A stretch of 64,000 nt of DNA from Octopus sinensis (GCF_006345805.1 NC_043013.1:11532001-11596000), one strand, 5' to 3'. Positions 9,484 to 60,961 are shown, counted from the stretch's first letter. A program made the numbers and translations. The notes: generated by a model not told the origin, from the letters alone.

Positions 9484-9845
9484 TATTCTTTTATTCTTTT
9501 ACTGGTTTCAGCCAGAAGCTGGGGTCATGTTGGAGCATCGCTTGTCACTGCTTTTGGGTTCCTATTTGTCCTGTTTTTGGTGAAGAAGCGAGTTACTACG
9601 ATGAAGGCTCACCTGGGATTTCAGATAGAAATTTGTCCAGGTGCTTTTAGAAAGTCTCCACATCTACACCTCGCAAATCTCTGAGGTTGTTTGGCAGCAT
9701 GTTTAACCGTCGTGAACCCCTGAAACCCAATCTATTGCAATACTAAGGTCCTTATCCGAGATCAAGAAAGAGGGACTTTTAGTAATATGCAGTGCCGTCC
9801 AGTTTGTTGGTTGGTATAGCTTTTAATTCTAAAGTTCGGAGCTGT
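9484..9845 (-). mobile_element. CR1 LINE 3' end fragment with terminal stem-loop tail
   Basis: Minus strand encodes TGRHCIL...CNRLGFRGSRRLNMLPNNLRDLRGVDVETF...LDKFLSEIPGEP, homologous to 32340-32560, followed by the tail GCGATGCTCCAACATGACCCCAGCTTCTGGCTGAAAC. Confidence 0.8.
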
Positions 9846-9920: not shown

Positions 9921-9954
<34 letters not shown>

Positions 9955-10153
9955 CATACATGCATACATACATACATACATACATACATACATACATACA
10001 TACATACATGCATGCATACATACATACATACATACATACATACATACATACACACATGCATGAATACATACATACATACATACATACACACATGCATGCA
10101 TACATACATATATACATACATACATACATACATACATACATACATACATACAT
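9846..10153. repeat. (TACA)n microsatellite, about 300 bp
   Basis: Visible; source of the MYVC/HTYI ORFs. Confidence 0.97.
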
Positions 10154-10641
10154 ACAGACAGTACAGACAGACAGACAGATATAACTTTCTGTCTCTCTGC
10201 TTGCCCGTCTGTCTGTTTATCTAGCTATGCGTCTATATATATATGTAAAGGTGTAAAGGATTATCTTATGAATTTCAGTAGCTTACCACTGTTTCAGGTG
10301 TAAAATGAATTAGACCCATAGTTGAGTGTCTAAGTAACACCCTATAAATTCATCAGAGCCTCGAATATGGAGCATATATATGTCTGCGCTTGTTCGAAGT
10401 ATAACATTATTTACATTGTATATGAATGGAAAACGTAAAAATATAATAACCGTAACAACAACGAAGGGGCCATATTGACAAAATATATCGTGGTCATATA
10501 TATTTCATACACCTCACATGTTCAATATAGAACTCATATATAAAGAATAACAAAGATACAAATAAAAAATAAAAACGCTAATATAAAATAAACGAACAAT
10601 GAAATAAATCCACCACCTGTCCACCTATCTTTCTCTCGTTC

Positions 10642-23654: not shown

Positions 23655-26510
23655 GAAGGGGAGCCTAATGATTATGATAATTTAAAAAATAAAATTAAAA
23701 AAAATTAGAAAAGACCTGTCGATTCTTAATGAAATCAGCAAACAATCAACGCTACTGAGCAACAAAAAGAGAACAAAAATACTCCGCAAATATAACATCA
23801 CAGAAAAAGATTTGCCGGAGATAAAAGAAAAGCTGAAGCAAGATATCCTTGCCAAAGCTCAAAGGATCCGCCGGTACGAGAAACGCCAACGCTTCTTTGA
23901 ACAAAACAAAAAGTTCAACTCCAACCCCAAAAAGTTCTACCAAGAACTGGGCAAAAATAAAATAGAAGTCACTGCAGCACCAACGGCAGAAGAATTGGAA
24001 GAATTCTGGAGAGAAATATGGTCGGCGAACGAACAGCCAAAAAAGAGGAGTATCAAAATAACAAACTCGGCATCTGAACAACTTTAGACCCCCATAACAA
24101 CTGAAGAGGTCACCCAGGCACTGCAAAAACTAAGCAACTGGAAGGCACCTGGGCATGACAAGATCCCCAACTTCTGGTTGAAATATCTAACAGGAATGCA
24201 CAAAAAGCTGGCTGAAAACTTTAACACCATACTAGCAGAGCCAGAGACAATGCCTGGAATGGCTCACGAAGGGGAAAACCATCTTAATTCCCAAATCAAA
24301 TGAAACAGCAAAACCAGAAAACTACAGACCAATAACCTGCCTCCCTACTATGTTCAAGGCATTTACTGCAGTGATATCGCAAAGGCTGAACAAGCACCTG
24401 GACGAAAACAAACTGTTCCCAGAAGAGCAGAAAGGATGTCCGCAAAGGCTCATATGGCTGTAAAGATCAACTAATGATTAATAAAGCCGTAACTGAAGAC
24501 AGCCACAGAAAGAAGAAAGGCCTCAGTATGGCCTGGATTGACTACAAAAAGGCGTTTGATAGCATCCCCCACACATGGATCCTCGAAACACTAGCCATTA
24601 ACAAAGTAGCACCAACAATCATAAAATTCATAGAGCACTCTATGAATAAATGGCAAACAGTCCTACACCTCCAAACAAAAGAGGGACTCATGAAAACCAA
24701 AGACATCCCCATTAGAAGAGGAATATTCCAGGGAGACACGCTCTCTCCACTCCTTTTCTGCTTGGCACTGTCACCTCTATCTGATATGCTAAATAGAACT
24801 GGATGCGGATATAAATGTTACGGCAAAACGATCAGCCACCTTTTATATATGGATAACCTAAAACTATACGCTGCAAATGACAAACAGCTGGAAACACTAT
24901 TAAGACAGTTCATGGATTTACCAAAGAAATAGATATGAAATTTGGATTAGAAAAATGCGCCAAAGTAACCATGAAAGAGGAAAACTAGTTAAGAGTAACA
25001 ACATCACACTAGATGAAATAAAAGAATTAGACCAAGCCAAACTTACAAATACTTAGGAATCCATGAACTAGATAAGACACAACACACACAAATGAAAGAG
25101 AAAATAAAAAAAGAATATTATAGACGAGTTAGATCAATACTAAAAACAGAGCTCAATGCTAAAAACAAGATAATAGGTATCAACACTTTAGCTGTCCCAG
25201 TTATAAGTTACAGCTACAATATCCTTAACTGGACACGAAATGAACTGTCCAAAATAGATAGGAAAACAAGAAAAATAATGACAGGATCTAGGATGCATCA
25301 CCCAAAATATGACATAGAAAGACTATATATACAACGTATAGAAGGTGGTAGAGGCCTTATACAGCTGGAAAACTACTATAAAATAACCACCATAGGACTG
25401 CAAAAATATCTACTTCAGAAGGAAGGAAAACTGATCCAGATAGCGGCAAAACACGAGCAAAACAAAAAACTGTTCTCAGTATTTAAGGAAGCTGACAAAT
25501 ACAAACAAGAAATCATACCACCTAATAAACAAGAAGAAGAAGAAGAAGAAGAAGAAGAAGAAGATAAAGAAACAACAAAAGCTATAAAACAAATGAAATC
25601 CAAACTAAAAATAGAACAGCAACGAACCATGATAAAACGATGGCAAGAAAAGCCCCTTCATGGTAAATACTGGACTAAACTAAACGCAAAAGAAATAGAC
25701 AAAGAAAAATCCCAGCAATGGTTGAGAAGCTCAGGACTCAAAGCAGTAAACAGAGGGATTTTTAATTGCAGCACAAGACCAAAGCCTCCCCACCAGAAAT
25801 TACCAAAAACATGTAATGAAAAAAATATTACAAGTAACTGCAGAATATGTGGAGATGGACAAGAAACAATAAATCATATTATCTCTAGCTGCCCAGTCCT
25901 GGCTAAGAAGGAATATATTCACAGACATGACAGAGTTGAAACCTACATACATTGGAAGCTATGTCAACATTATGGAATAACAACAGAAAAAAGATGGTAT
26001 AGGCACACACCAGAAAAGGTCACAGAAAACGAGAAAGCAACCATACTCTGGGATATGCCGATACACACAGATAGAGAAATTAAGGCCAACAGACCAGATA
26101 TAGTTGTCAGAGATCATGAAGAAAAAAAATGCTTTCTAATTGATGTATCAATACCGGCAGATGACAACGTGTCTCTAAAAGAAATGGAGAAACTCTCAAA
26201 ATACAAAGACCTGGAAATAGAGGTAACTAGAATGTGGAATCTGAAAACAGAAACAATTGCTATCATAGTAGGTGCATTAGGCATGATAAAAAAATATTCA
26301 GACAAATACATAACAAAAACACCAGGACTTACAAACACATATAACATACAGAAAATTGCACAACTAGGCACTGCACACATCCTACGCAGAACACTTTCCA
26401 TACAATAACCATCAGAGCATCACAACAAATCACAGCACATACCCAAGGCACACAGAGCTGCGCTCGGTAGTGAAGTGAAAGCACGCTATAAAAATAAAAC
26501 TACTGAATAA
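23653..26510 (+). mobile_element. R4/Dong-clade non-LTR retrotransposon (RT + CCHC + RLE endonuclease), 5'-truncated, several frameshifts
   Basis: WKAPGHDKIPNFWLK, NYRPITCLPT, IDYKKAFDSIPH, GIFQGDTLSPLLF, YMDN(D), CRICGDGQETINHIISSC, NRPDIVV...IDVSIP...EKLSKY; 3' UTR ends in (TAA)n. Confidence 0.93.
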
Positions 26511-31855: not shown

Positions 31856-32709
31856 GAAAAGAATAGCATGCAGTTCAATGCTGAAAAGTTTCAACCTTTA
31901 TGCTATCAGCATGCAAAATTAAATGCAATACCCAATAAATAAACTGGACCTGGAGGGATTGCAATCCCAAAGGCACAGTCAGTGCGAGACCTGGGTATTT
32001 ACATGAGTGATGATGCAACCTTTCATGTGCATGTTGCTGAATTGGCAATGAAATGTAGAACAAGAGACCAGGAAACCATGATGGTCCTCTGGAGGACACT
32101 GGTCCTAACCCACTTTGACTATTGCTCTCAGCTATGGTCACCATCCAGTGTCAAGTTAATCACAGAACTTGAGGAGATCCAACGAAGCTACACGAAGAAG
32201 ATAGCCTCTGCACAGCATATAAGCTATTGGGAAAGACTCAAGAGATTGGGACTCTATTCCTTAGAGCGTAGGCGAGAAAGATATGCCATAATATACATCT
32301 GGAAGATCCTAGAAGGACTTGTCCCAAACTTTGGCATCGAGAGTTATACAAATGCCAGAACAGGGCGCCACTGCCAAGGACTCCAAATTTGCCATCAAGA
32401 TGTAGGACAAGATACTGCGATAGCCTGGGCTTCCGAGGCCCACAGCTCTTCAATATCCTCCCGAAGAACCTAAGAGAACTGCATGGGGTGGATGCAGATG
32501 TCTTTAAAATGAAACTGGATCTCTTCTTGTCAGGTGTCCCAGATGAACCAACTTCACGGCAGGAGGTGCAGATAAGGCCAGCTGCATCGAACTCTCTCAT
32601 GCACCAAATGGCAATTGCTAGAGGACATTCGTGAAGTAAAATCATGTAGCAACACCAAATGGCGGTGCCCCAGTATGGCTTGTGAGCTGAAACTAGATAA
32701 AAAAAAAAT
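31855..32709 (+). mobile_element. CR1-clade LINE, 5'-truncated, with 3' stem-loop and A tail
   Basis: [66 protein letters not shown]; ends AAATGGCGGTGCCCCAGTATGGCTTGTGAGCTGAAACTAGATAAAAAAAAAA. Confidence 0.9.
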
Positions 32710-33069
32710 ATATATATATTCATATATATGTTTATATGCACATGTATGCATATAAACATATATATACATATATATATATATATGTGTGTGTATATATATA
32801 TATATGTATATATATGTATATGTATATGTATATATGTATGCATATATACATATATGTATATACACATATATATATAGATGTATATATATATATATATTAT
32901 ATATGTGTGTGAGAGAGTGTGCTTGTGTGTGTAAGTGTACGTGCAGGTATCTGTGTGTACCAATCTACGACTAGTATTTACAAATTTACCTATATGTGTA
33001 CATGTGTATATGCATACATATGCATATAAACATATATATGTATATATATGTTTATATACACACACAGAC

Positions 33070-36824: not shown

Positions 36825-37120
36825 ATGTCTCACACGTATATGGGTGGTTTACATTGGTCTTTCTTAGGTTTCATTTGTATCTCGGGTTGGTCATTATGGG
36901 AATGATATGGATTTTATATATGTTTGGAAATTTATTTATTCATTTTTTTTATATATGAATTTTATCCAGTTTTTAAATGTCTTAATATTATATATTGTAT
37001 GACTTGCCTCACATACGTTGCTATATAACTATGAGCTATGGGTATACATAGCCGCACGACTTTTAAACCACAATAGCAGCGTGTATAGAAAAACGAATGA
37101 ACGAATCGAATAAGTCACAC

Positions 37121-37128
37121 TACTACTG

Positions 37129-37182
<54 letters not shown>

Positions 37183-37280
37183 TACTACTACTACTACTAA
37201 TACTACTGTTGCTGCTACTGCTGATTATAATAAAGGATTATTATTGTTGTTATTATCATCACCATCATCATCACCATCAC

Positions 37281-37331
<51 letters not shown>

Positions 37332-37363
37332 CATCATCATCATTATTATCATTATCATTATTA

Positions 37364-37450
<87 letters not shown>

Positions 37451-37465
37451 TATTATTATTATTAA
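37121..37465. repeat. Compound trinucleotide array (TAC)n-(CAT)n-(TAT)n
   Basis: Visible. Confidence 0.95.
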
Positions 37466-38520
37466 TTGAATAAATAATATTACTGCCAGTTACTAGACGC
37501 TGGTAACAAATCTGTCAGAAAAAAAATGGATTTTTACTGCAGTCGTTTGATGGAAATCTTTTTATGGTTAGTTTTGTTAACAAAGAAATTTAGATGGTTT
37601 TAACCATCCATTCCATTAAAACTAGGATAAAGGAAAATTCGTACGTAGACATTTATTATATTTTTGAAACCATAAAAATGTAATTCTCCATTTGTGGTTC
37701 AGTATGATGAACCGTGTGGGGAACAAGAATAAGTGTTTGTCACAAGGTAGTGGCAACACATAAATATTACGAAAATATTGAAAATTTTCGACAAGCTGCC
37801 GGACGAGATAGGGAAGATGCCCGACGACTGCTCGGTTCAAAGAATCTCTTGACCAGAAATGGCCTGAACTCTTTGCATGAACACCCTCCCTGTACATAAC
37901 TCCATGTCCCCCTACATGGCCTTGCTTTTGCTTTTTGAGCCAAAAAAGTAACTTAACTTATATAAGATAGATAAAGAAACATTAAAGTCTTTTTTAAAGG
38001 GCATAGTTTTAAAATCGGACATTTACAATTTGCCAAATTTCATTGAAATTTGACTGAAGAGCAAATTTCAATGAAACTTTGCAACCCGTCCTCATCTTTA
38101 GCTAGCGTTGCATGTCTTGAAGAAGTAATGGATAAGTAAAGAGGATTAAAAAAAGTGGTATGCAAGAAAGTCAGTGCTTTCTGATTTGCCGAATTTAACA
38201 AATGTCATAGGGGAAGGAGAAGAAAATTATTTTAAATGATAATTCAAAATAAGCTGGTTCTACTTTCATGAATAGAGAACTAGGTAAGGTGTGGGAAGAT
38301 GTATGTTGATCGGCCGCAGCAGATTAAGTTTAAGGATGAAGAGGTAAGAGACAAAATCAAATAGTACTCCACGCACATGAACACAGGCGCCATGTGATAT
38401 GAGGATTCGAAACTCAAATGATATGGTCAGTGGCATTTGGGGAAGTCGACCCAACTCTCGTCTCCGATTTTATGACATAATACGAGTAAGTGATGTTTTA
38501 GATGACTGCTTCGAATTAGC

Positions 38521-40122: not shown

Positions 40123-40291
40123 CATATACATATATATATATATATATGCATATAATTTTGTTTGAACATCTATATATTCTTATATATATATATATCGATA
40201 TGCGCGCTCACACACACACAGACACACGCACACAAAAGCGTGCTCGCACATACACATGTATAGATACATACGTGTATGTGTATATATGTAC

Positions 40292-40330
<39 letters not shown>

Positions 40331-40347
40331 TACATACATATATATAT

Positions 40348-41310: not shown

Positions 41311-41817
41311 CCATCATCATCATCATTATCAACATCATCATTAACATCATCATGATATTACGGTCATTATTGCCTTCTTCCATATATTATGATGAGGAAG
41401 ATGATGACGACGACGACAACGATGGCAGCGACGACGACTACGACTACGACGAAGATGAGGATGATGATGATGATAATTACTATATTATAATGTTCATTAT
41501 CAACATTGTCGACATACTAACTTTCAACATCATCACTAATATAACAATGATGATGATGGTGTGGAAGATGATGATGAAGAGGACTAGGACCAGGACAACC
41601 GTCATTATCATCATCATCAGCATCGTCTTCAACAACATCATTTTCATCGTCGTCGTCGTTGTCGTCGGCCTCGTCGTCATCATCATCATCATCATCAGCA
41701 TCAGCATCGTCTTCATCAACATCATTTTCATCGTCTTCGTCGTTGTCGTCGTTGTCGTCATCATCATCATCATCATTAACATCAACATCGCCGTCGTCGG
41801 CCTCATCGTCGTCGTCG

Positions 41818-41855
<38 letters not shown>

Positions 41856-41900
41856 TTCATCATCGTTGTCGTCTTCATCATCGTTGTCGTCGTTGTCGGC
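40520..41900. repeat. Long cryptic trinucleotide region (CCT, TAC, CAA, CAT, CGT)
   Basis: Visible; produces homopolymer ORFs on both strands. Confidence 0.9.
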
Positions 41901-42528
41901 GTTGTCGCATCCAAGTACAACTCACCGACATTGTTACTCACATAACCAGCATCAGAATCACTTATTCACAACAGCCTACGTCCTCTTTCATTCATCTTCT
42001 CTTTTACTCGCCCAACTCATATCATTTTTCCTCCCCTATTCTCTTTCAACTCAACATTTTCTTTTGCTTTCTTCTTTTTTTCTTTCTTTGCTTCTTGAAG
42101 TATTTTCCTTTATTATCAAATTTTTTTTTTGTATTTTCTGTTTCCTTCTTGTTTTTCTACATTCCTGCATTATTTATTTTTCTTGATGGCTTACTAAGCG
42201 CTCCGTATGTCTATGTGGTTAAGAAGTTCGTTCGAAATGACACACGAGTTACTTGTTTGATCTAACTGAGAAGCATGTTAGGCTTGTGTCTTCCGCTATA
42301 CACTTATATTGATCATTTATCTCGTAAGAAAAACGTTGGCAGACAGAAAACTGCATAGAAAACTCGCGTCATTGGAGTATAACGCCATACCAGAATATGT
42401 ACACACTCGCCTTACGGGCCTCTAAGTGCAGTCAATGATACGTTGGACTTTCATTGAAATGATACTTGAGACAAATAGGTAACCATGTCTGCAGTAAAAT
42501 CAGTGGAGGAAAATGATGAAGGTTGAAT

Positions 42529-58135: not shown

Positions 58136-58878
58136 CCAACGAGTGACGTACACAACCCAAATTATTGGCATCGTCAAAATATGTAAATTACGAAAGATCA
58201 TACATATGGATATGCCACATATTCCACATAGATTACTCTCCATATAAATGCAGCCATACTCTTGCTTTTTTGGGGTCCCATGGACGTCAGTGTTTTCAAT
58301 TACCTGTCATCCCATCCGTTAGCATAATCGAATGCAAAACCCTGTCCCTCGTCTCTGACCGAGACTTAGGTGCAACTCGTTAAATCAAAGTAAAACAAAA
58401 CCGAAACTTATAATGATGATGATGATGATGACGTTAAGAGACGAAAGAAAGATTTAGTCAAGAATATCTCAGATGAACCAAATTAATCATGGAGAGTAGA
58501 CTCAATGGAAAGCACAAAATCATGTCAATGAATACATGTGTTGTTCCCTAATTGCGATACGTCACAGATGTCGTTAGGAATACAAAAAAGAATGAGCTTG
58601 AGGGAATGTACAGCAAAACAGGAAAGTTGTGAGAGTGGACAAGAAACTGCACCGTAAATGCGATATCGATAGAATGTAAGTGCCTAGACTCAAGGACGGT
58701 ACGGGCCTCATAGAATGCAAGATCTGTGATGCCAGGGAAGAAAACATTCTGGGTTGATACATTAAACAGTAGCTTCAGCCCTTCTTTGTCGCTGTTAGAA
58801 TTAGCAACATAATACATACAGAAAATAATGACACTCCACAAACCATTTAAGAAACAAAGATTAAAATTTCAGTATCTC

Positions 58879-58986
58879 ATACTAGCTACAGCGGTACATA
58901 TTCTAAAATTGGAACGATACAGAGAAGATTTTAGCATGGCCCCTGCACAAGGATGACACGCAAATTCGTGAAGCGTTCCATATTTT
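58879..58986 (+). pseudogene. U6: Full-length U6 snRNA retrocopy
   Basis: CATATTCTAAAATTGGAACGATACAGAGAAGATT(TT)AGCATGGCCCCTGCACAAGGATGACACGCAAATTCGTGAAGCGTTCCATATTTT matches canonical metazoan U6; ACAGAGA box at 58919-58925; 2-nt insertion and damaged 5' stem. Confidence 0.95.
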
Positions 58987-58988
58987 CT

Positions 58989-59036
58989 AAATGGCGGTGC
59001 CCCAGCATGGCCACAGCTCATGAGCTGAAACTAGAA
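58989..59036 (+). mobile_element. CR1 3'-terminal stem-loop fused to U6
   Basis: AAATGGCGGTGCCCCAGCATGGCCACAGCTCATGAGCTGAAACTAGA matches the CR1 end at 32657-32697. Confidence 0.88.
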
Positions 59037-59145
59037 TCAATCATACGATTTACTCTTGTTATTGTTGTGTTGTGCTGAGACCGAAATGAACTGAATGAGC
59101 AGGTTTTATTTTTAAATCTAAGACAGACTTTCATTCCGACTATAG

Positions 59146-59689
59146 CAGTGGTTCCCAAACCATGAGTCGCGACCCGCAGATGGGTCGCGAACGGAATCTT
59201 AGTGGGTCGCAAAAATGTTATAAAATTACGCATTAGCTTTGATTAACTGCTGTCTATCGAGATAGTTCAAGAGTTATGTTTTGAAACATACCAGACACCC
59301 GAAAATTGGTACAATTCTGGGCGTCTCTTCAAACCTCGTACCCAATCGTTTGCACGCAAAGCATTAGAAGTATTTCTCCCTTTCACGTCATCTTACATTT
59401 GTGAAGCTGGATTTTCATCATTGGTTGGGATTAAAAAGCAAATAATCGAAATAATCTGCAGCTCTCAAATTCTTTAAGCCTGAAACTATCACGCATTGAA
59501 CCTGATGTTAATTCTATTATTGAGCGTAGCAAGAAACAGGCTAATCCTTCTCACAGGCCTCACTGAAGATGTAATCTGAAATAAATTTGTTAATTTCATT
59601 AATGTTTTCACTCAGTAGAGTTAAGTGGGTCGTCATAAACTGGTGTGATGAATAGTGGGTCGCGACTCTGAAAAGTTTGGGAACCACTG
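59146..59689 (+). mobile_element. hAT (Charlie/Buster-like) deletion derivative, 544 bp
   Basis: TIRs CAGTGGTTCCCAAAC / GTTTGGGAACCACTG; TSD GACTATAG / ATCTATAG; subterminal GGGTCGCG repeats; dimerisation-domain remnant LPFTSSYICEAGFSSLVGIKSK. Confidence 0.9.
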
Positions 59690-60329
59690 ATCTATAGCAT
59701 TCAGTTTTTTGAGAAGAGAGTAGTCTTGAACTACAGTATACAGTGCTTCGTTTCTTTATCTTGTATCATAGGGGTAATTAGGAGATTAGACTACTATTTC
59801 TAGCATATGAAGCGATCTCCAAAAATTGTTTAGTTTATGGTTAAGATTACATACAAAGTGATGGATCTTATGGCGACAATAATACAGTGTATGTCGGGTA
59901 GGTGACTAGGTGTCCGGGTGTCTGTAAACGAAGATGTTGCTATAGAGGGTACAGGGAAAAGTTAAAAGAGTAATGGCGTGTGGGTATTATTTATATTTTA
60001 TTCATTTTGTTTCATTATTTTCTTTTTATTTCATATATTTTGAATTTATATTTTTAGCTGTCTTATTTTCGTTATATTTTATTTCGTTAATCGTTTGTCC
60101 TTTTACTTTCAGAATATGACAACGAGATCACCAATGATAACAACAACAACAACAACAACAACCACATGGACAATAATAAAGCTGACGCCAAAACAACAAC
60201 AACAACAACAACAACAAGAATATATGCAAAAATATAATATTTAAAAAAAATCATGATTACGCTGAATAATTATTTCAATGATGATGATTACAACGAAAAC
60301 GATGAATACAACGTTCATGTTGTCTATGA

Positions 60330-60790
60330 AGTAGTTGATGATGATGATGATGAAGATGATGATGATGATGATGATAATGACGACGACAAAAACGATGATG
60401 ACGATGATGATAGTGAAGATGAAGATGGGTGTTAGAATGGTGGTGGTGGTGGGGGTAAAGATGTTGAGGATAATGATTATGATGATGGTGATAATAGTGA
60501 TGATGATGATGATGATGATGAATATGGTAATGATGATGATAAGGATGATGATGATGATGATGATGATGGTGATGATGAATATGGTGACGATGATGATGAT
60601 GACGACGACGATGAAGATGATGATGATGATGAAGACGACGACGATGATGATGATGATGATGAGGATGATGATGGTGATGATGAAGATGATGATGATGATG
60701 AAGACGACGACGATGTTGATGATGATGATGATATGATAATGATGAGTATGATGATGATGGTGATGGTGGTGGTGTGTGGGTGGTGATGAT
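60330..60790. repeat. (GAT)n-based cryptic trinucleotide array
   Basis: Visible. Confidence 0.93.
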
Positions 60791-60961
60791 CGTGATGACT
60801 GATAAAAATAAAGATACATATATATATATATATATAATATATATATATATTATATAATATATATATACACATACATATTGATATCATAATAACAGCAAAA
60901 ACTTCCAAAATACAACATATTTTGTGAGACGGGTATGAAGTTTTCTTTTGTTCATATATAC

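What the first reader, a model, noticed from the sequence alone, without database searches (positions are those of the whole stretch)
58879..59045. U6 snRNA-CR1 chimeric retrocopy: a candidate U6-headed SINE or RNA-ligation product in a cephalopod
Seen: a complete U6 sequence ending ...CCATATTTT is joined through 2 nt (CT) to only the last ~48 nt of the local CR1 family, i.e. just the recognition stem-loop, then AATCAATCA. There is no obvious upstream PSE/TATA and no convincing TSD. Established: U6/LINE-1 chimeras with full-length U6 joined at its 3' U-tract are known in mammals and are attributed to RNA ligation or template switching. I am not aware of a described equivalent with a CR1 stem-loop in molluscs, but cannot check. 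Inference: either the U6-LINE fusion pathway extends to stringent CR1 elements in invertebrates, or this is one member of a snRNA-headed SINE family with a head-plus-LINE-tail design.
Basis: partly seen in the sequence, partly recalled or inferred. Interest (0 to 1): 0.8.

Follow-up and report, generated by a model that had tools for sequence, protein, structure and literature searches.

The report
U6 snRNA fused to CR1-like LINE tail
A dead copy of the U6 spliceosomal RNA is fused head-to-tail to the last ~50 bases of a CR1-like jumping gene, most likely made in one retrotransposition event of a kind already known from vertebrates and apparently not yet described in a mollusc.

Summary
Window 58879-58986 is a full-length U6 (Rfam 96 bits, E 1e-23, the only snRNA in 64 kb). 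It ends in TTTT and abuts 58987-59043 directly.

That tail is the terminal part of the 3' UTR of a CR1-like LINE. A copy of the LINE lies at 31868-32697, and its relatives include one from the octopod Argonauta hians. The tail carries two hairpins, supported by covariation across 13 tails, followed by a short repeat.

The best explanation is a single-event U6/LINE chimeric retropseudogene, formed by template switching or by RNA ligation before reverse transcription. U6 chimeras with stringent LINEs (L2, RTE) are already published for platypus and lizard, and one unresolved CR1 case for turkey (Doucet 2015). This is therefore a new member of a known kind.

The rival reading, a U6-headed SINE family, could not be tested because no cephalopod genome was searchable. 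Three indirect searches found no second copy. An automated Octopus vulgaris annotation lists SINE/U and SINE/U-L1 families, so this reading stays open at about 0.2. A 6-bp flanking repeat (TCATAC) may be a target-site duplication but is not significant.

The parts
58879..58986 (+). U6 snRNA-derived segment, full length from nt 1 to the TTTT terminator/3' U-tract. It carries a TT insertion between GAUU and AGC and a G>A change in CUGCGCAAGG, so it is a pseudogene and not a working U6.
   Evidence: Rfam RF00026, 96.2 bits, E 1.3e-23, model 1-105/105. Alignment to vertebrate-type U6 gives 9 substitutions plus a 2-nt insertion, with 7 of the 9 substitutions in nt 1-19.
58987..59034 (+). Terminal 48 nt of the 3' UTR of a CR1-like LINE: CTAAATGG, then hairpin 1, hairpin 2 and CTGAAACTAG. 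It is joined directly to the U6 U-tract.
   Evidence: Matches the window LINE 3' end at 32655-32697 and LINE 3' ends in L003, L004, L005, L006 and L002 (Argonauta hians). Covariance model R1 scores it 60.3 bits, though this tail was one of the training rows.
58992..59013 (+). Hairpin 1 of the LINE tail. Outer pairs are 58992-58995 with 59010-59013; inner pairs are 58997-59000 with 59005-59008.
   Evidence: MFE fold -18 kcal/mol, z -2.3. In alignment A1 the pair at columns 8-23 varies CG:9, UA:2, UG:2.
59014..59027 (+). Hairpin 2 of the LINE tail (CAGCTCATGAGCTG), the likely reverse-transcriptase recognition stem-loop.
   Evidence: Covariation across 13 tails: columns 30-38 show CG:6 and UA:6, and columns 31-37 show CG:9 and UA:1. 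Helix 2 is 95% paired. The whole structure is 91.5% paired, against 20-39% when partners are slid.
59035..59043 (+). AATCAATCA, a short microsatellite-like 3' terminus. It sits where related LINEs and SINEs carry (TAAAAGAG)n, (TAAAAGAA)n or (ATTAAAAC)n.
   Evidence: Alignment A1; sequence.
58877..58882 (+). TCATAC, the possible 5' copy of a 6-bp target-site duplication. It overlaps the first 4 nt of U6, which could reflect microhomology at the 5' junction.
   Evidence: Longest shared word between the two flanks. Not significant: >=6 nt in 13% of random pairs.
59041..59046 (+). TCATAC, the possible 3' copy of the target-site duplication. It overlaps the end of the AATCA repeat.
31868..32697 (+). 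5'-truncated copy of the donor-type CR1-like LINE. It comprises the C-terminal ORF, a stop at 32632-32634, and a 63-nt 3' UTR with part of hairpin 2 deleted. It is reference material for the tail, not part of the chimera.
   Evidence: Translation, sequence, homologues at 58-70% identity including Argonauta hians, and R1 hit at 32658-32713, 47.1 bits.

Best explanation
This is a U6/LINE chimeric retropseudogene made in one retrotransposition event by the machinery of a CR1-like ('stringent') LINE.

Proposed steps:
1. The LINE's reverse transcriptase bound the two-hairpin module at the 3' end of its own RNA, or of a fragment of it.
2. It primed on nicked target DNA through the terminal short repeat and copied about 50 nt.
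3. It then continued onto a U6 snRNA. Either it jumped templates to the U6 3' end, or the U6 (which ends in UUUU with a 2',3'-cyclic phosphate) had already been ligated to a 5'-OH fragment of the LINE 3' UTR by an RtcB-type ligase.
4. U6 was copied to, or nearly to, its 5' end, and the cDNA was joined to the target, possibly through a 4-nt microhomology (ATAC) inside a 6-bp target-site duplication.

The product has no known promoter of its own and is an inert pseudogene.

Shown here: the two parts, their orientation, the exact junction, and the conserved structure of the tail. Inferred: that it arose in one event, the enzyme responsible, and the choice between template switching and ligation.
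For: - U6 is full length and in sense orientation, and ends in exactly TTTT.
- The next base begins homology to the LINE 3' UTR, 21 nt after that LINE's stop codon, and runs to the LINE's natural 3' terminus.
- There is no filler and no poly(A) between the parts.
- The tail retains the whole conserved two-hairpin module, which a stringent LINE would need in order to be copied. The structure is 91.5% paired across 13 tails and has covarying pairs.
- The tail is of the LINE type (27/27 nt identical to L003; CTGAAACTAGA as in the window LINE), not the type of the abundant local SINE.
- None of the other 13 tails in the window is a tail-only fragment; the shortest is a 164-nt truncated SINE. With about 14 tails per 64 kb, an independent insertion landing within about 2 nt of the U6 end has a chance of about 1e-3.
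- The tail alone has no flanking repeat longer than 4 nt, whereas the whole chimera has a 6-nt one.
- Published precedent: U6 chimeras with short L2 tails and 1-9 bp TSDs in platypus, and with L2/RTE in lizard (PMC4476161). RtcB ligation joins U6 ending in 4 U precisely to 5'-OH RNA (PMC6789731).
- The U6 part is not a working gene: it has a TT insertion between the ACAGAGA box and the AGC triad, and a G>A change at a conserved position.
Against: - Only one locus was seen, and no orthologous empty site was available, so the one-event origin is not demonstrated.
- The TSD is not statistically supported (p about 0.13).
- Copy number in the genome is unknown, so an amplified family is not excluded.
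- The LINE's clade (CR1 in the strict sense) was not tested by phylogeny.
- The organism is only inferred to be an octopod, from the best named LINE homologue (Argonauta hians, 58% identity).
Confidence: 0.6

Rival explanations
1. The locus is one member of an amplified U6-headed, CR1-mobilised SINE family, with a head-plus-LINE-tail design and no body. A founding chimera of the above kind would have landed where it could be transcribed, and its transcripts would have been copied repeatedly by the LINE.
For: - The design (small-RNA head plus complete LINE recognition module) is what a minimal SINE needs.
- snRNA-headed SINEs exist (SINEU, with U1/U2 heads, in crocodilians; PMC4494074).
- CR1 template switching onto a tRNA has founded a SINE family (PittSINE; PMC5729268).
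- An automated Octopus vulgaris repeat annotation lists one 'SINE/U' family (369,490 bp) and one 'SINE/U-L1' family (52,753 bp). Two 'recent' insertions of the latter total 353 bp, about 176 bp each, close to this 165-bp element (PMC13282606). Those families are not described, and it is not stated which snRNA is involved.
- Seven of the 9 U6 substitutions lie in the 5' stem-loop yet keep 6 of 7 pairs. This could reflect a propagating variant.
Against: - There is no second copy in the 64-kb window at any Rfam threshold.
- There is none among 39 U6-antisense ORFs in 5.8 billion clustered proteins, a set that did recover mammalian U6/L1-type ORFs.
- There is none in the sense frame among 1.84 billion representatives.
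- By established knowledge, metazoan U6 genes use an external type-3 promoter that a retrocopy does not carry, so a U6 head gives no self-transcription.
- RepeatModeler-type labels 'SINE/U' normally arise from similarity to U1/U2-derived SINEU, not U6 (my own knowledge, unverified).
Confidence: 0.2
2. Two independent events produced the structure. A U6 pseudogene or decayed U6 gene copy was already present, and an extremely 5'-truncated CR1-like insertion (about 55 nt) later landed exactly at its T-tract.
For: - LINE insertions are often heavily 5'-truncated.
- A T-rich terminator could be a favoured nick site.
- No significant TSD ties the two parts together.
- Doucet et al. note that two-step origins cannot always be excluded (PMC4476161).
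Against: - The junction is exact, with no intervening base.
- The tail alone has no flanking repeat longer than 4 nt.
- None of the 13 other tails in the window is a tail-only fragment.
- Chance adjacency is about 1e-3, given about 14 tails per 64 kb.
- A stand-alone U6 retrocopy needs a relaxed LINE and would usually carry poly(A) or be 3'-truncated (PMC4476161). Here U6 is complete with no A-tail.
Confidence: 0.12
3. This is a functional or recently functional U6 gene that happens to have a LINE tail downstream.
For: - The segment runs the full length of U6 with a TTTT terminator.
- The 5' stem is largely paired.
- A TTTAAG motif lies around -33 to -28.
Against: - A 2-nt insertion lies between the ACAGAGA box and the AGC triad.
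- There is a G>A change in the conserved CUGCGCAAGG, and the UUCG loop is lost.
- No recognisable PSE is present, and the upstream region is simply AT-rich.
Confidence: 0.03

Closest known systems
U6/L2, U6/Mon-1 (platypus) and U6/L2, U6/RTE, U6/AnolisSINE2 (Anolis) chimeric retropseudogenes (Doucet et al. 2015, PMC4476161)
   Same: The U6 snRNA copy is fused at its 3' end to a short 3'-terminal piece of a stringent, stem-loop-recognising LINE that ends in a simple repeat. TSDs are very short or absent. The published interpretation is template switching during target-primed reverse transcription.
   Different: The host appears to be a mollusc (octopod-like) rather than a vertebrate. The LINE is CR1-like rather than L2 or RTE. 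U6 is full length here, whereas almost all platypus cases are 5'-truncated. The only published CR1 case (turkey) was 5'-truncated and unresolved because of an assembly gap.
Mammalian U6/L1 chimeric pseudogenes (Buzdin 2002; Garcia-Perez 2007; Moldovan et al. 2019, PMC6789731)
   Same: A full-length U6 ending in its U-tract is joined precisely, in the same orientation, to a 5'-truncated LINE 3' end. This is compatible with RtcB-type ligation of U6>p to a 5'-OH LINE RNA followed by retrotransposition.
   Different: L1 is a relaxed, poly(A)-dependent LINE whose retained portions vary and are often long, with 6-19 bp TSDs. Here the retained LINE part is only the about 50-nt structured recognition module plus a short repeat, and the TSD is at most 6 bp.
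SINEU (U1/U2 snRNA-headed SINEs of crocodilians; Kojima 2015, PMC4494074)
   Same: An snRNA-derived head lies at the 5' end of a non-autonomous retroelement, and the origin is proposed to be template switching onto an snRNA.
   Different: SINEU families are multi-copy, with subfamilies, shared internal deletions and 5' extensions. Their heads are U1/U2, not U6. Here only a single copy is documented.
CR1-mobilised tRNA SINEs such as TguSINE1/PittSINE (Suh et al. 2017, PMC5729268)
   Same: The tail is the CR1 hairpin (reverse-transcriptase binding site) plus a terminal microsatellite. The head was acquired by template switching onto a small pol III RNA.
   Different: Those heads are tRNAs with internal A and B boxes, and the families are amplified. 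A U6 head has no known internal promoter in animals.

Membership tests
U6/LINE chimeric retropseudogene | Sense-oriented U6 snRNA sequence at the 5' side, ending at its 3' U-tract | tested here: met
   Rfam U6 model 1-105/105, 96.2 bits; the copy ends in TTTT at 58986
U6/LINE chimeric retropseudogene | Direct fusion, in the same orientation, to a 5'-truncated LINE that runs to the LINE's natural 3' terminus | tested here: met
   58987-59043 aligns to the LINE 3' UTR at 32655-32697 and to five external LINE 3' ends, through to the terminal repeat
U6/LINE chimeric retropseudogene | Target-site duplication flanking the whole chimera and not the parts | tested here: inconclusive
   TCATAC flanks the whole element, and the tail alone has no repeat longer than 4 nt. 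Six-nt repeats arise in 13% of random pairs. Stringent-LINE chimeras often have 1-9 bp TSDs.
U6/LINE chimeric retropseudogene | Both parts arrive together, i.e. the orthologous site is empty in an outgroup | not testable with these tools
   No cephalopod genome collection was searchable, and flanking ORFs are not in the protein collection
U6/LINE chimeric retropseudogene | No U6 gene promoter (PSE/TATA) upstream | tested here: inconclusive
   No PSE is recognisable and the upstream region is AT-rich with a TTTAAG at about -30. No bona fide U6 gene of the species was available for comparison.
SINE (snRNA-headed, LINE-tailed) | Many copies sharing the same head-tail junction and diagnostic mutations | tested here: inconclusive
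   There is one copy in 64 kb. No other copy was found in the protein-space searches or the pattern scans. Control scans show that the prokaryote-genome and viral collections hold no octopod DNA.
SINE (snRNA-headed, LINE-tailed) | 3' tail shared with a partner LINE | tested here: met
   Alignment A1 and model R1
SINE (snRNA-headed, LINE-tailed) | Head provides transcription (internal pol III promoter or equivalent) | not testable with these tools
   By established knowledge, animal U6 genes use external type-3 promoters. No expression data were available.
CR1-clade LINE (donor of the tail) | 3' end made of a hairpin (reverse-transcriptase binding site) followed by a roughly 8-bp microsatellite | tested here: met
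   Two hairpins with covariation, followed by (TAAAAGAG)n, (TAAAAGAA)n or (ATTAAAAC)n in relatives. The criterion is taken from PMC5729268. In the chimera the terminal repeat is only AATCAATCA.
CR1-clade LINE (donor of the tail) | Reverse-transcriptase / C-terminal domain groups with CR1 in a phylogeny | not tested
   Only an RVT_1 domain and a CR1/L2-group C-terminal motif ([13 protein letters not shown]) were seen. No reference set was available for a tree, so 'CR1-like' is a provisional label.
Functional U6 snRNA gene | Invariant catalytic-core sequence and spacing (ACAGAGA ... AGC, ISL) | tested here: not met
   A TT insertion lies between GAUU and AGC, there is a G>A change in CUGCGCAAGG, and the UUCG loop is lost

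The most novel reading that the evidence does not exclude
The locus is a member, or the fossil founder, of a U6-headed SINE family in octopods that is mobilised by a CR1-like LINE. It would be the first SINE class with a U6 head. Such a family would imply either a non-canonical internal pol III promoter in the U6-plus-tail unit or repeated read-through from a master locus. The unexplained 'SINE/U' and 'SINE/U-L1' entries in the Octopus vulgaris repeat annotation could be this family.
Probability: 0.17. Interest if true: 0.65.

Novelty: new member of a known kind. Interest (0 to 1): 0.35.

Why it matters
If confirmed as a one-step insertion, this would be a clean example that U6 capture also happens with a CR1-type, stem-loop-dependent LINE, and in a mollusc. 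I found no invertebrate case in the literature I searched. That would support the published view that U6/LINE fusion is a general property of non-LTR retrotransposition, or of U6>p ligation, rather than a peculiarity of mammalian L1.

It also shows what a stringent LINE needs to have copied: about 50 nt holding two covarying hairpins plus a short repeat. Such chimeras are the presumed raw material from which new SINEs arise, so a genome-wide census in octopods, where SINEs make up about 12% of the genome, would show whether a U6 head can ever found a family. As a single decayed copy it has no evident consequence for the host.

Tried and rejected
1. Junction-pattern scan of JGI metagenome contigs. 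The single hit (L001) lies in a bacterial coding region, has no U6 by Rfam, and is a chance match.

2. Junction scans of the prokaryote genome contigs and the viral contigs found nothing. Control scans with the tail core alone gave one chance hit in Ramlibacter and none in the viral set. Those collections therefore hold no octopod DNA, and the negatives carry no information.

3. Protein-space search. The chimera is open in the antisense frame (53 aa) and in one sense frame (47 aa).
- The antisense query against 5.8 billion proteins returned 39 spurious U6-antisense ORFs. Several have mammalian L1-like neighbours, so the approach can detect chimeras. None carried a CR1-type tail.
- The sense query against 1.84 billion representatives returned only an unrelated repeat protein.

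4. Exact look-up of 10 ORFs around the locus, intended to find the same or an orthologous locus. None is in the collection.

5. Paralogous empty site. The immediate flanks (58140-58878 and 59044-59900) are unique in the window.

6. Species identification through a second LINE ORF (25092-26405). The best hit was an unnamed Logan contig at 83%, and the named hits were corals, fish and shrimps at about 50%. This was not informative.

7. Reading the TSD as solid was rejected after the random-pair control.

8. Reading the 5' stem differences as heavy decay was rejected, because they preserve pairing.

9. Rfam sub-threshold hits for other small RNAs were all microsatellite artefacts.

Full report
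**1. The observation**

Rfam finds a single family at gathering threshold in the whole 64-kb window. It is U6 (RF00026) at 58879-58987 on the + strand, covering model positions 1-105 of 105, with 96.2 bits against a threshold of 44 and E 1.3e-23. A permissive scan at E<=0.1 adds only 'miRNA' matches that sit on (TA)n and (TATG)n microsatellites.

The U6 copy ends ...GCGTTCCATATTTT at 58986. Directly after it comes CTAAATGGCGGTGCCCCAGCATGGCCACAGCTCATGAGCTGAAACTAGAATCAATCA (58987-59043).

The best match to this tail elsewhere in the window is 32655-32697...CACCAAATGGCGGTGCCCCAGTATGGCTTGTGAGCTGAAACTAGA followed by A-rich and TA repeats. That stretch is the 3' UTR of a 5'-truncated LINE fragment (31868-32697). 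The fragment's reading frame ends at a TGA at 32632. It carries the C-terminal motif ...[28 protein letters not shown]..., which is characteristic of the CR1/L2 group.

One refinement concerns the two 'linker' bases CT. They align with CC of the LINE copy, so the fusion is most simply read as direct, with the LINE part starting 21 nt after the LINE's stop codon.

**2. What the tail is**

A protein search with the LINE's C-terminal 257 residues found relatives at 58-70% identity. The only named one among the closest hits is from the octopod Argonauta hians. More distant hits, at about 40%, come from cnidarians and crustaceans.

I fetched DNA for five of these relatives (L002-L006). In every case the ORF is followed, after a short UTR, by the same module. 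It reads GGYGGTGCNCCAGCATGRCCNCAG, then a short hairpin, then CTGAAAC, then a 5-8-nt unit repeated. The abundant SINE of the window ends in the same module, with (TAAAAGAG)n as the repeat.

Thirteen tails were aligned (A1).
- The chimera's tail folds into two adjacent hairpins (-18 kcal/mol, z = -2.3).
- On the alignment this structure is paired in 91.5% of cells, against 20-39% when the partners are slid by 1-3 columns.
- It has compensatory pairs. Columns 30-38 show CG in 6 sequences and UA in 6. Columns 31-37 show CG in 9 and UA in 1. Columns 8-23 show CG in 9, UA in 2 and UG in 2.

[quoted passage not shown] I did not place the reverse transcriptase in a phylogeny, so 'CR1-like' remains a provisional label.

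The chimera's tail is of the LINE type, not the local SINE type. It is identical to L003 over 27 nt, and it shares CTGAAACTAGA with the window LINE. The SINE has a different hairpin 2 (CAGTCAAATGACTG).

**3. One event or two**

A covariance model of the tail (R1) finds 13 tails in the window at E below 1e-8, plus one weaker match.
- Ten or eleven are SINE copies whose homology extends 100-350 nt upstream of the tail.
- One of them is a 164-nt truncated SINE.
- Two are LINE 3' ends.
- Only the tail next to U6 has no upstream homology to anything else.

Tail-only fragments are therefore not a common background here. At about 14 tails per 64 kb, an independent insertion whose 5' end falls within 2 nt of the U6 terminus would be expected with a probability of about 1e-3.

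The tail on its own has no flanking direct repeat longer than 4 nt. The whole chimera is flanked by TCATAC (58877-58882 and 59041-59046). That repeat is not significant by itself, because 13% of random window pairs at the same spacing share 6 nt or more in this low-complexity sequence. If it is real, its 5' copy overlaps the first four bases of U6 (ATAC). That would be an ordinary microhomology at the 5' junction. This last point is inference.

**4. State of the U6 part**

I compared the copy with vertebrate-type U6, a reference sequence recalled from memory. The copy has 9 substitutions and a 2-nt insertion. The TT insertion lies between GAUU and the AGC triad. One substitution is a G>A change in the conserved CUGCGCAAGG. 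Both make a working U6 unlikely.

Seven of the nine substitutions fall in nt 1-19, yet 6 of the 7 pairs of the 5' stem survive, including a G3-C17 to A3-U17 exchange. This looks more like the native, species-specific 5' stem-loop of the source gene than like decay. In that case the copy is only about 2-3% diverged over the rest of its length. No bona fide U6 gene of the organism was available to check this, or to judge the upstream region. That region is AT-rich with no recognisable PSE.

**5. Mechanism**

The anatomy matches the known U6/LINE chimeric retropseudogenes. Two routes are published, and the present locus fits both.
- Template switching of the LINE reverse transcriptase from its own RNA onto U6 during target-primed reverse transcription (PMC4476161).
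- Ligation of U6, which ends in UUUU with a 2',3'-cyclic phosphate, to a 5'-OH LINE RNA fragment by RtcB, followed by retrotransposition of the fused RNA (PMC6789731).

U6 ends in exactly four T, there is no microhomology at the junction, and the LINE part begins in the unstructured stretch about 5 nt upstream of hairpin 1. I cannot separate the two routes from one genomic copy.

Because the LINE is of the stringent type, only RNAs carrying the hairpin module can be copied. This explains why the LINE part extends to the natural 3' end and includes the entire module.

**6. Comparison with the literature**

Doucet et al. 2015 report the following:
- About 40 U6-L2/Mon-1 chimeras in platypus, with short L2 pieces, 1-9 bp TSDs, and nearly all U6 copies 5'-truncated.
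- U6 chimeras with L1, L2, RTE and AnolisSINE2 in Anolis.
- One unresolved 5'-truncated U6 next to a CR1-like element in turkey.

They conclude that the process is general to non-LTR retrotransposons. I found no report of a U6/LINE chimera in a mollusc or other invertebrate, and no U6-headed SINE, in the full-text library. Known snRNA-headed SINEs (SINEU) have U1 or U2 heads. The finding is therefore a new member of a known kind.

**7. The SINE-family alternative**

I could not run the decisive genome-wide search, because no cephalopod genome is in the searchable DNA collections.

Indirect attempts found no second copy:
- A junction scan of metagenome contigs gave one chance bacterial match.
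- Scans of the prokaryote and viral collections were empty. Control scans show these collections lack octopod DNA.
- The antisense translation of the chimera retrieved 39 U6-antisense 'proteins', including mammalian U6/L1-like ones, but none with this tail.
- The sense translation retrieved nothing relevant.

These negatives are weak. The best LINE hit was only 66% identical, which suggests that the source species is poorly represented in the protein collection.

One point favours the alternative. A 2026 automated repeat annotation of Octopus vulgaris lists one 'SINE/U' family (369 kb) and one 'SINE/U-L1' family (53 kb, with a consensus of about 176 bp judged from two full-length insertions), without further description. 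This is a lead, not evidence, because the paper does not say which snRNA is involved.

A priori, a U6 head is a poor SINE head, because animal U6 promoters lie upstream of the gene (established knowledge). I put this reading at about 0.2.

**8. Verdict**

The best explanation, at confidence about 0.6, is a single-event U6/CR1-like chimeric retropseudogene that is old enough to carry an indel and is inert. The rivals are an amplified U6-headed SINE (0.2), two independent insertions (0.12) and a U6 gene with a downstream LINE (0.03). Interest is moderate to low. It would rise substantially only if a genome-wide census shows an amplified family.

Noticed in passing
window tails at 1110+, 4179+, 6337-, 14873+, 20855-, 28395-, 35503-, 46155+, 54272-, 57770-, 18279- (weak): At least 10-11 copies of one SINE family lie in the 64 kb. 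Each has an internal (TG/TA)n-rich stretch and a CR1-type two-hairpin tail ending in (TAAAAGAG)n. Hairpin 2 (CAGTCAAATGACTG) differs from that of the LINEs by compensatory changes, which suggests a separate LINE partner subfamily.
   Followed up: partly
window 31868-32697 (+) and about 9485-9839 (-): Two 5'-truncated LINE 3' ends belong to the same tail group. The first has lost part of hairpin 2 through a 6-10 nt deletion. The second belongs to another subfamily (hairpin CAGCTTCTGGCTG, repeat TAAAAGAA).
   Followed up: partly
window 24474-24932 and 25092-26408 (+): A different LINE has an RVT_1 ORF followed by an intact 438-aa ORF with a zf-RVT domain. It is 83% identical to a protein from a Logan contig, and about 50% identical over its full length to proteins of corals, a killifish, shrimps and a sea star. 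That is an unusually wide host spread for one family.
   Followed up: partly
window 59140-59175 and 59657-59697: A 41-nt inverted repeat (83%) encloses about 480 bp and starts about 95 bp downstream of the chimera (GCAGTGGTTCCCAAACCATGAGTCGCGACCCGC...). It may mark the terminal inverted repeats of a MITE.
   Followed up: no
window-wide, e.g. 1853-1967, 9953-10161, 40272-40343: More than 150 sub-threshold Rfam 'microRNA' matches (mir-297, mir-3149, mir-1277, mir-466 and others) all lie on TA/TATG/CATA microsatellites. They are artefacts of low-complexity sequence.
   Followed up: yes
protein database hits P0001-P0039: The public protein collection contains 39 'proteins' that are antisense translations of U6 (…KYGTLHEFACHPCAGAMLIFSVSFQF). 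Several are preceded by mammalian L1-like peptide. They are spurious ORFs called over U6 pseudogenes and U6/L1 chimeras.
   Followed up: partly
window 58879-58897: In the U6 copy, 7 of the 9 substitutions relative to vertebrate-type U6 are concentrated in the 5' stem-loop, yet 6 of its 7 base pairs are kept (G3-C17 becomes A3-U17). This probably reflects the native U6 5' stem of this organism rather than decay.
   Followed up: partly
window 60241-60819, 41352-41945, 37100-37500: Long trinucleotide-repeat tracts (GAT/ATC, CTA, TTA) create long spurious ORFs on both strands and dominate the repeat finder's output.
   Followed up: no
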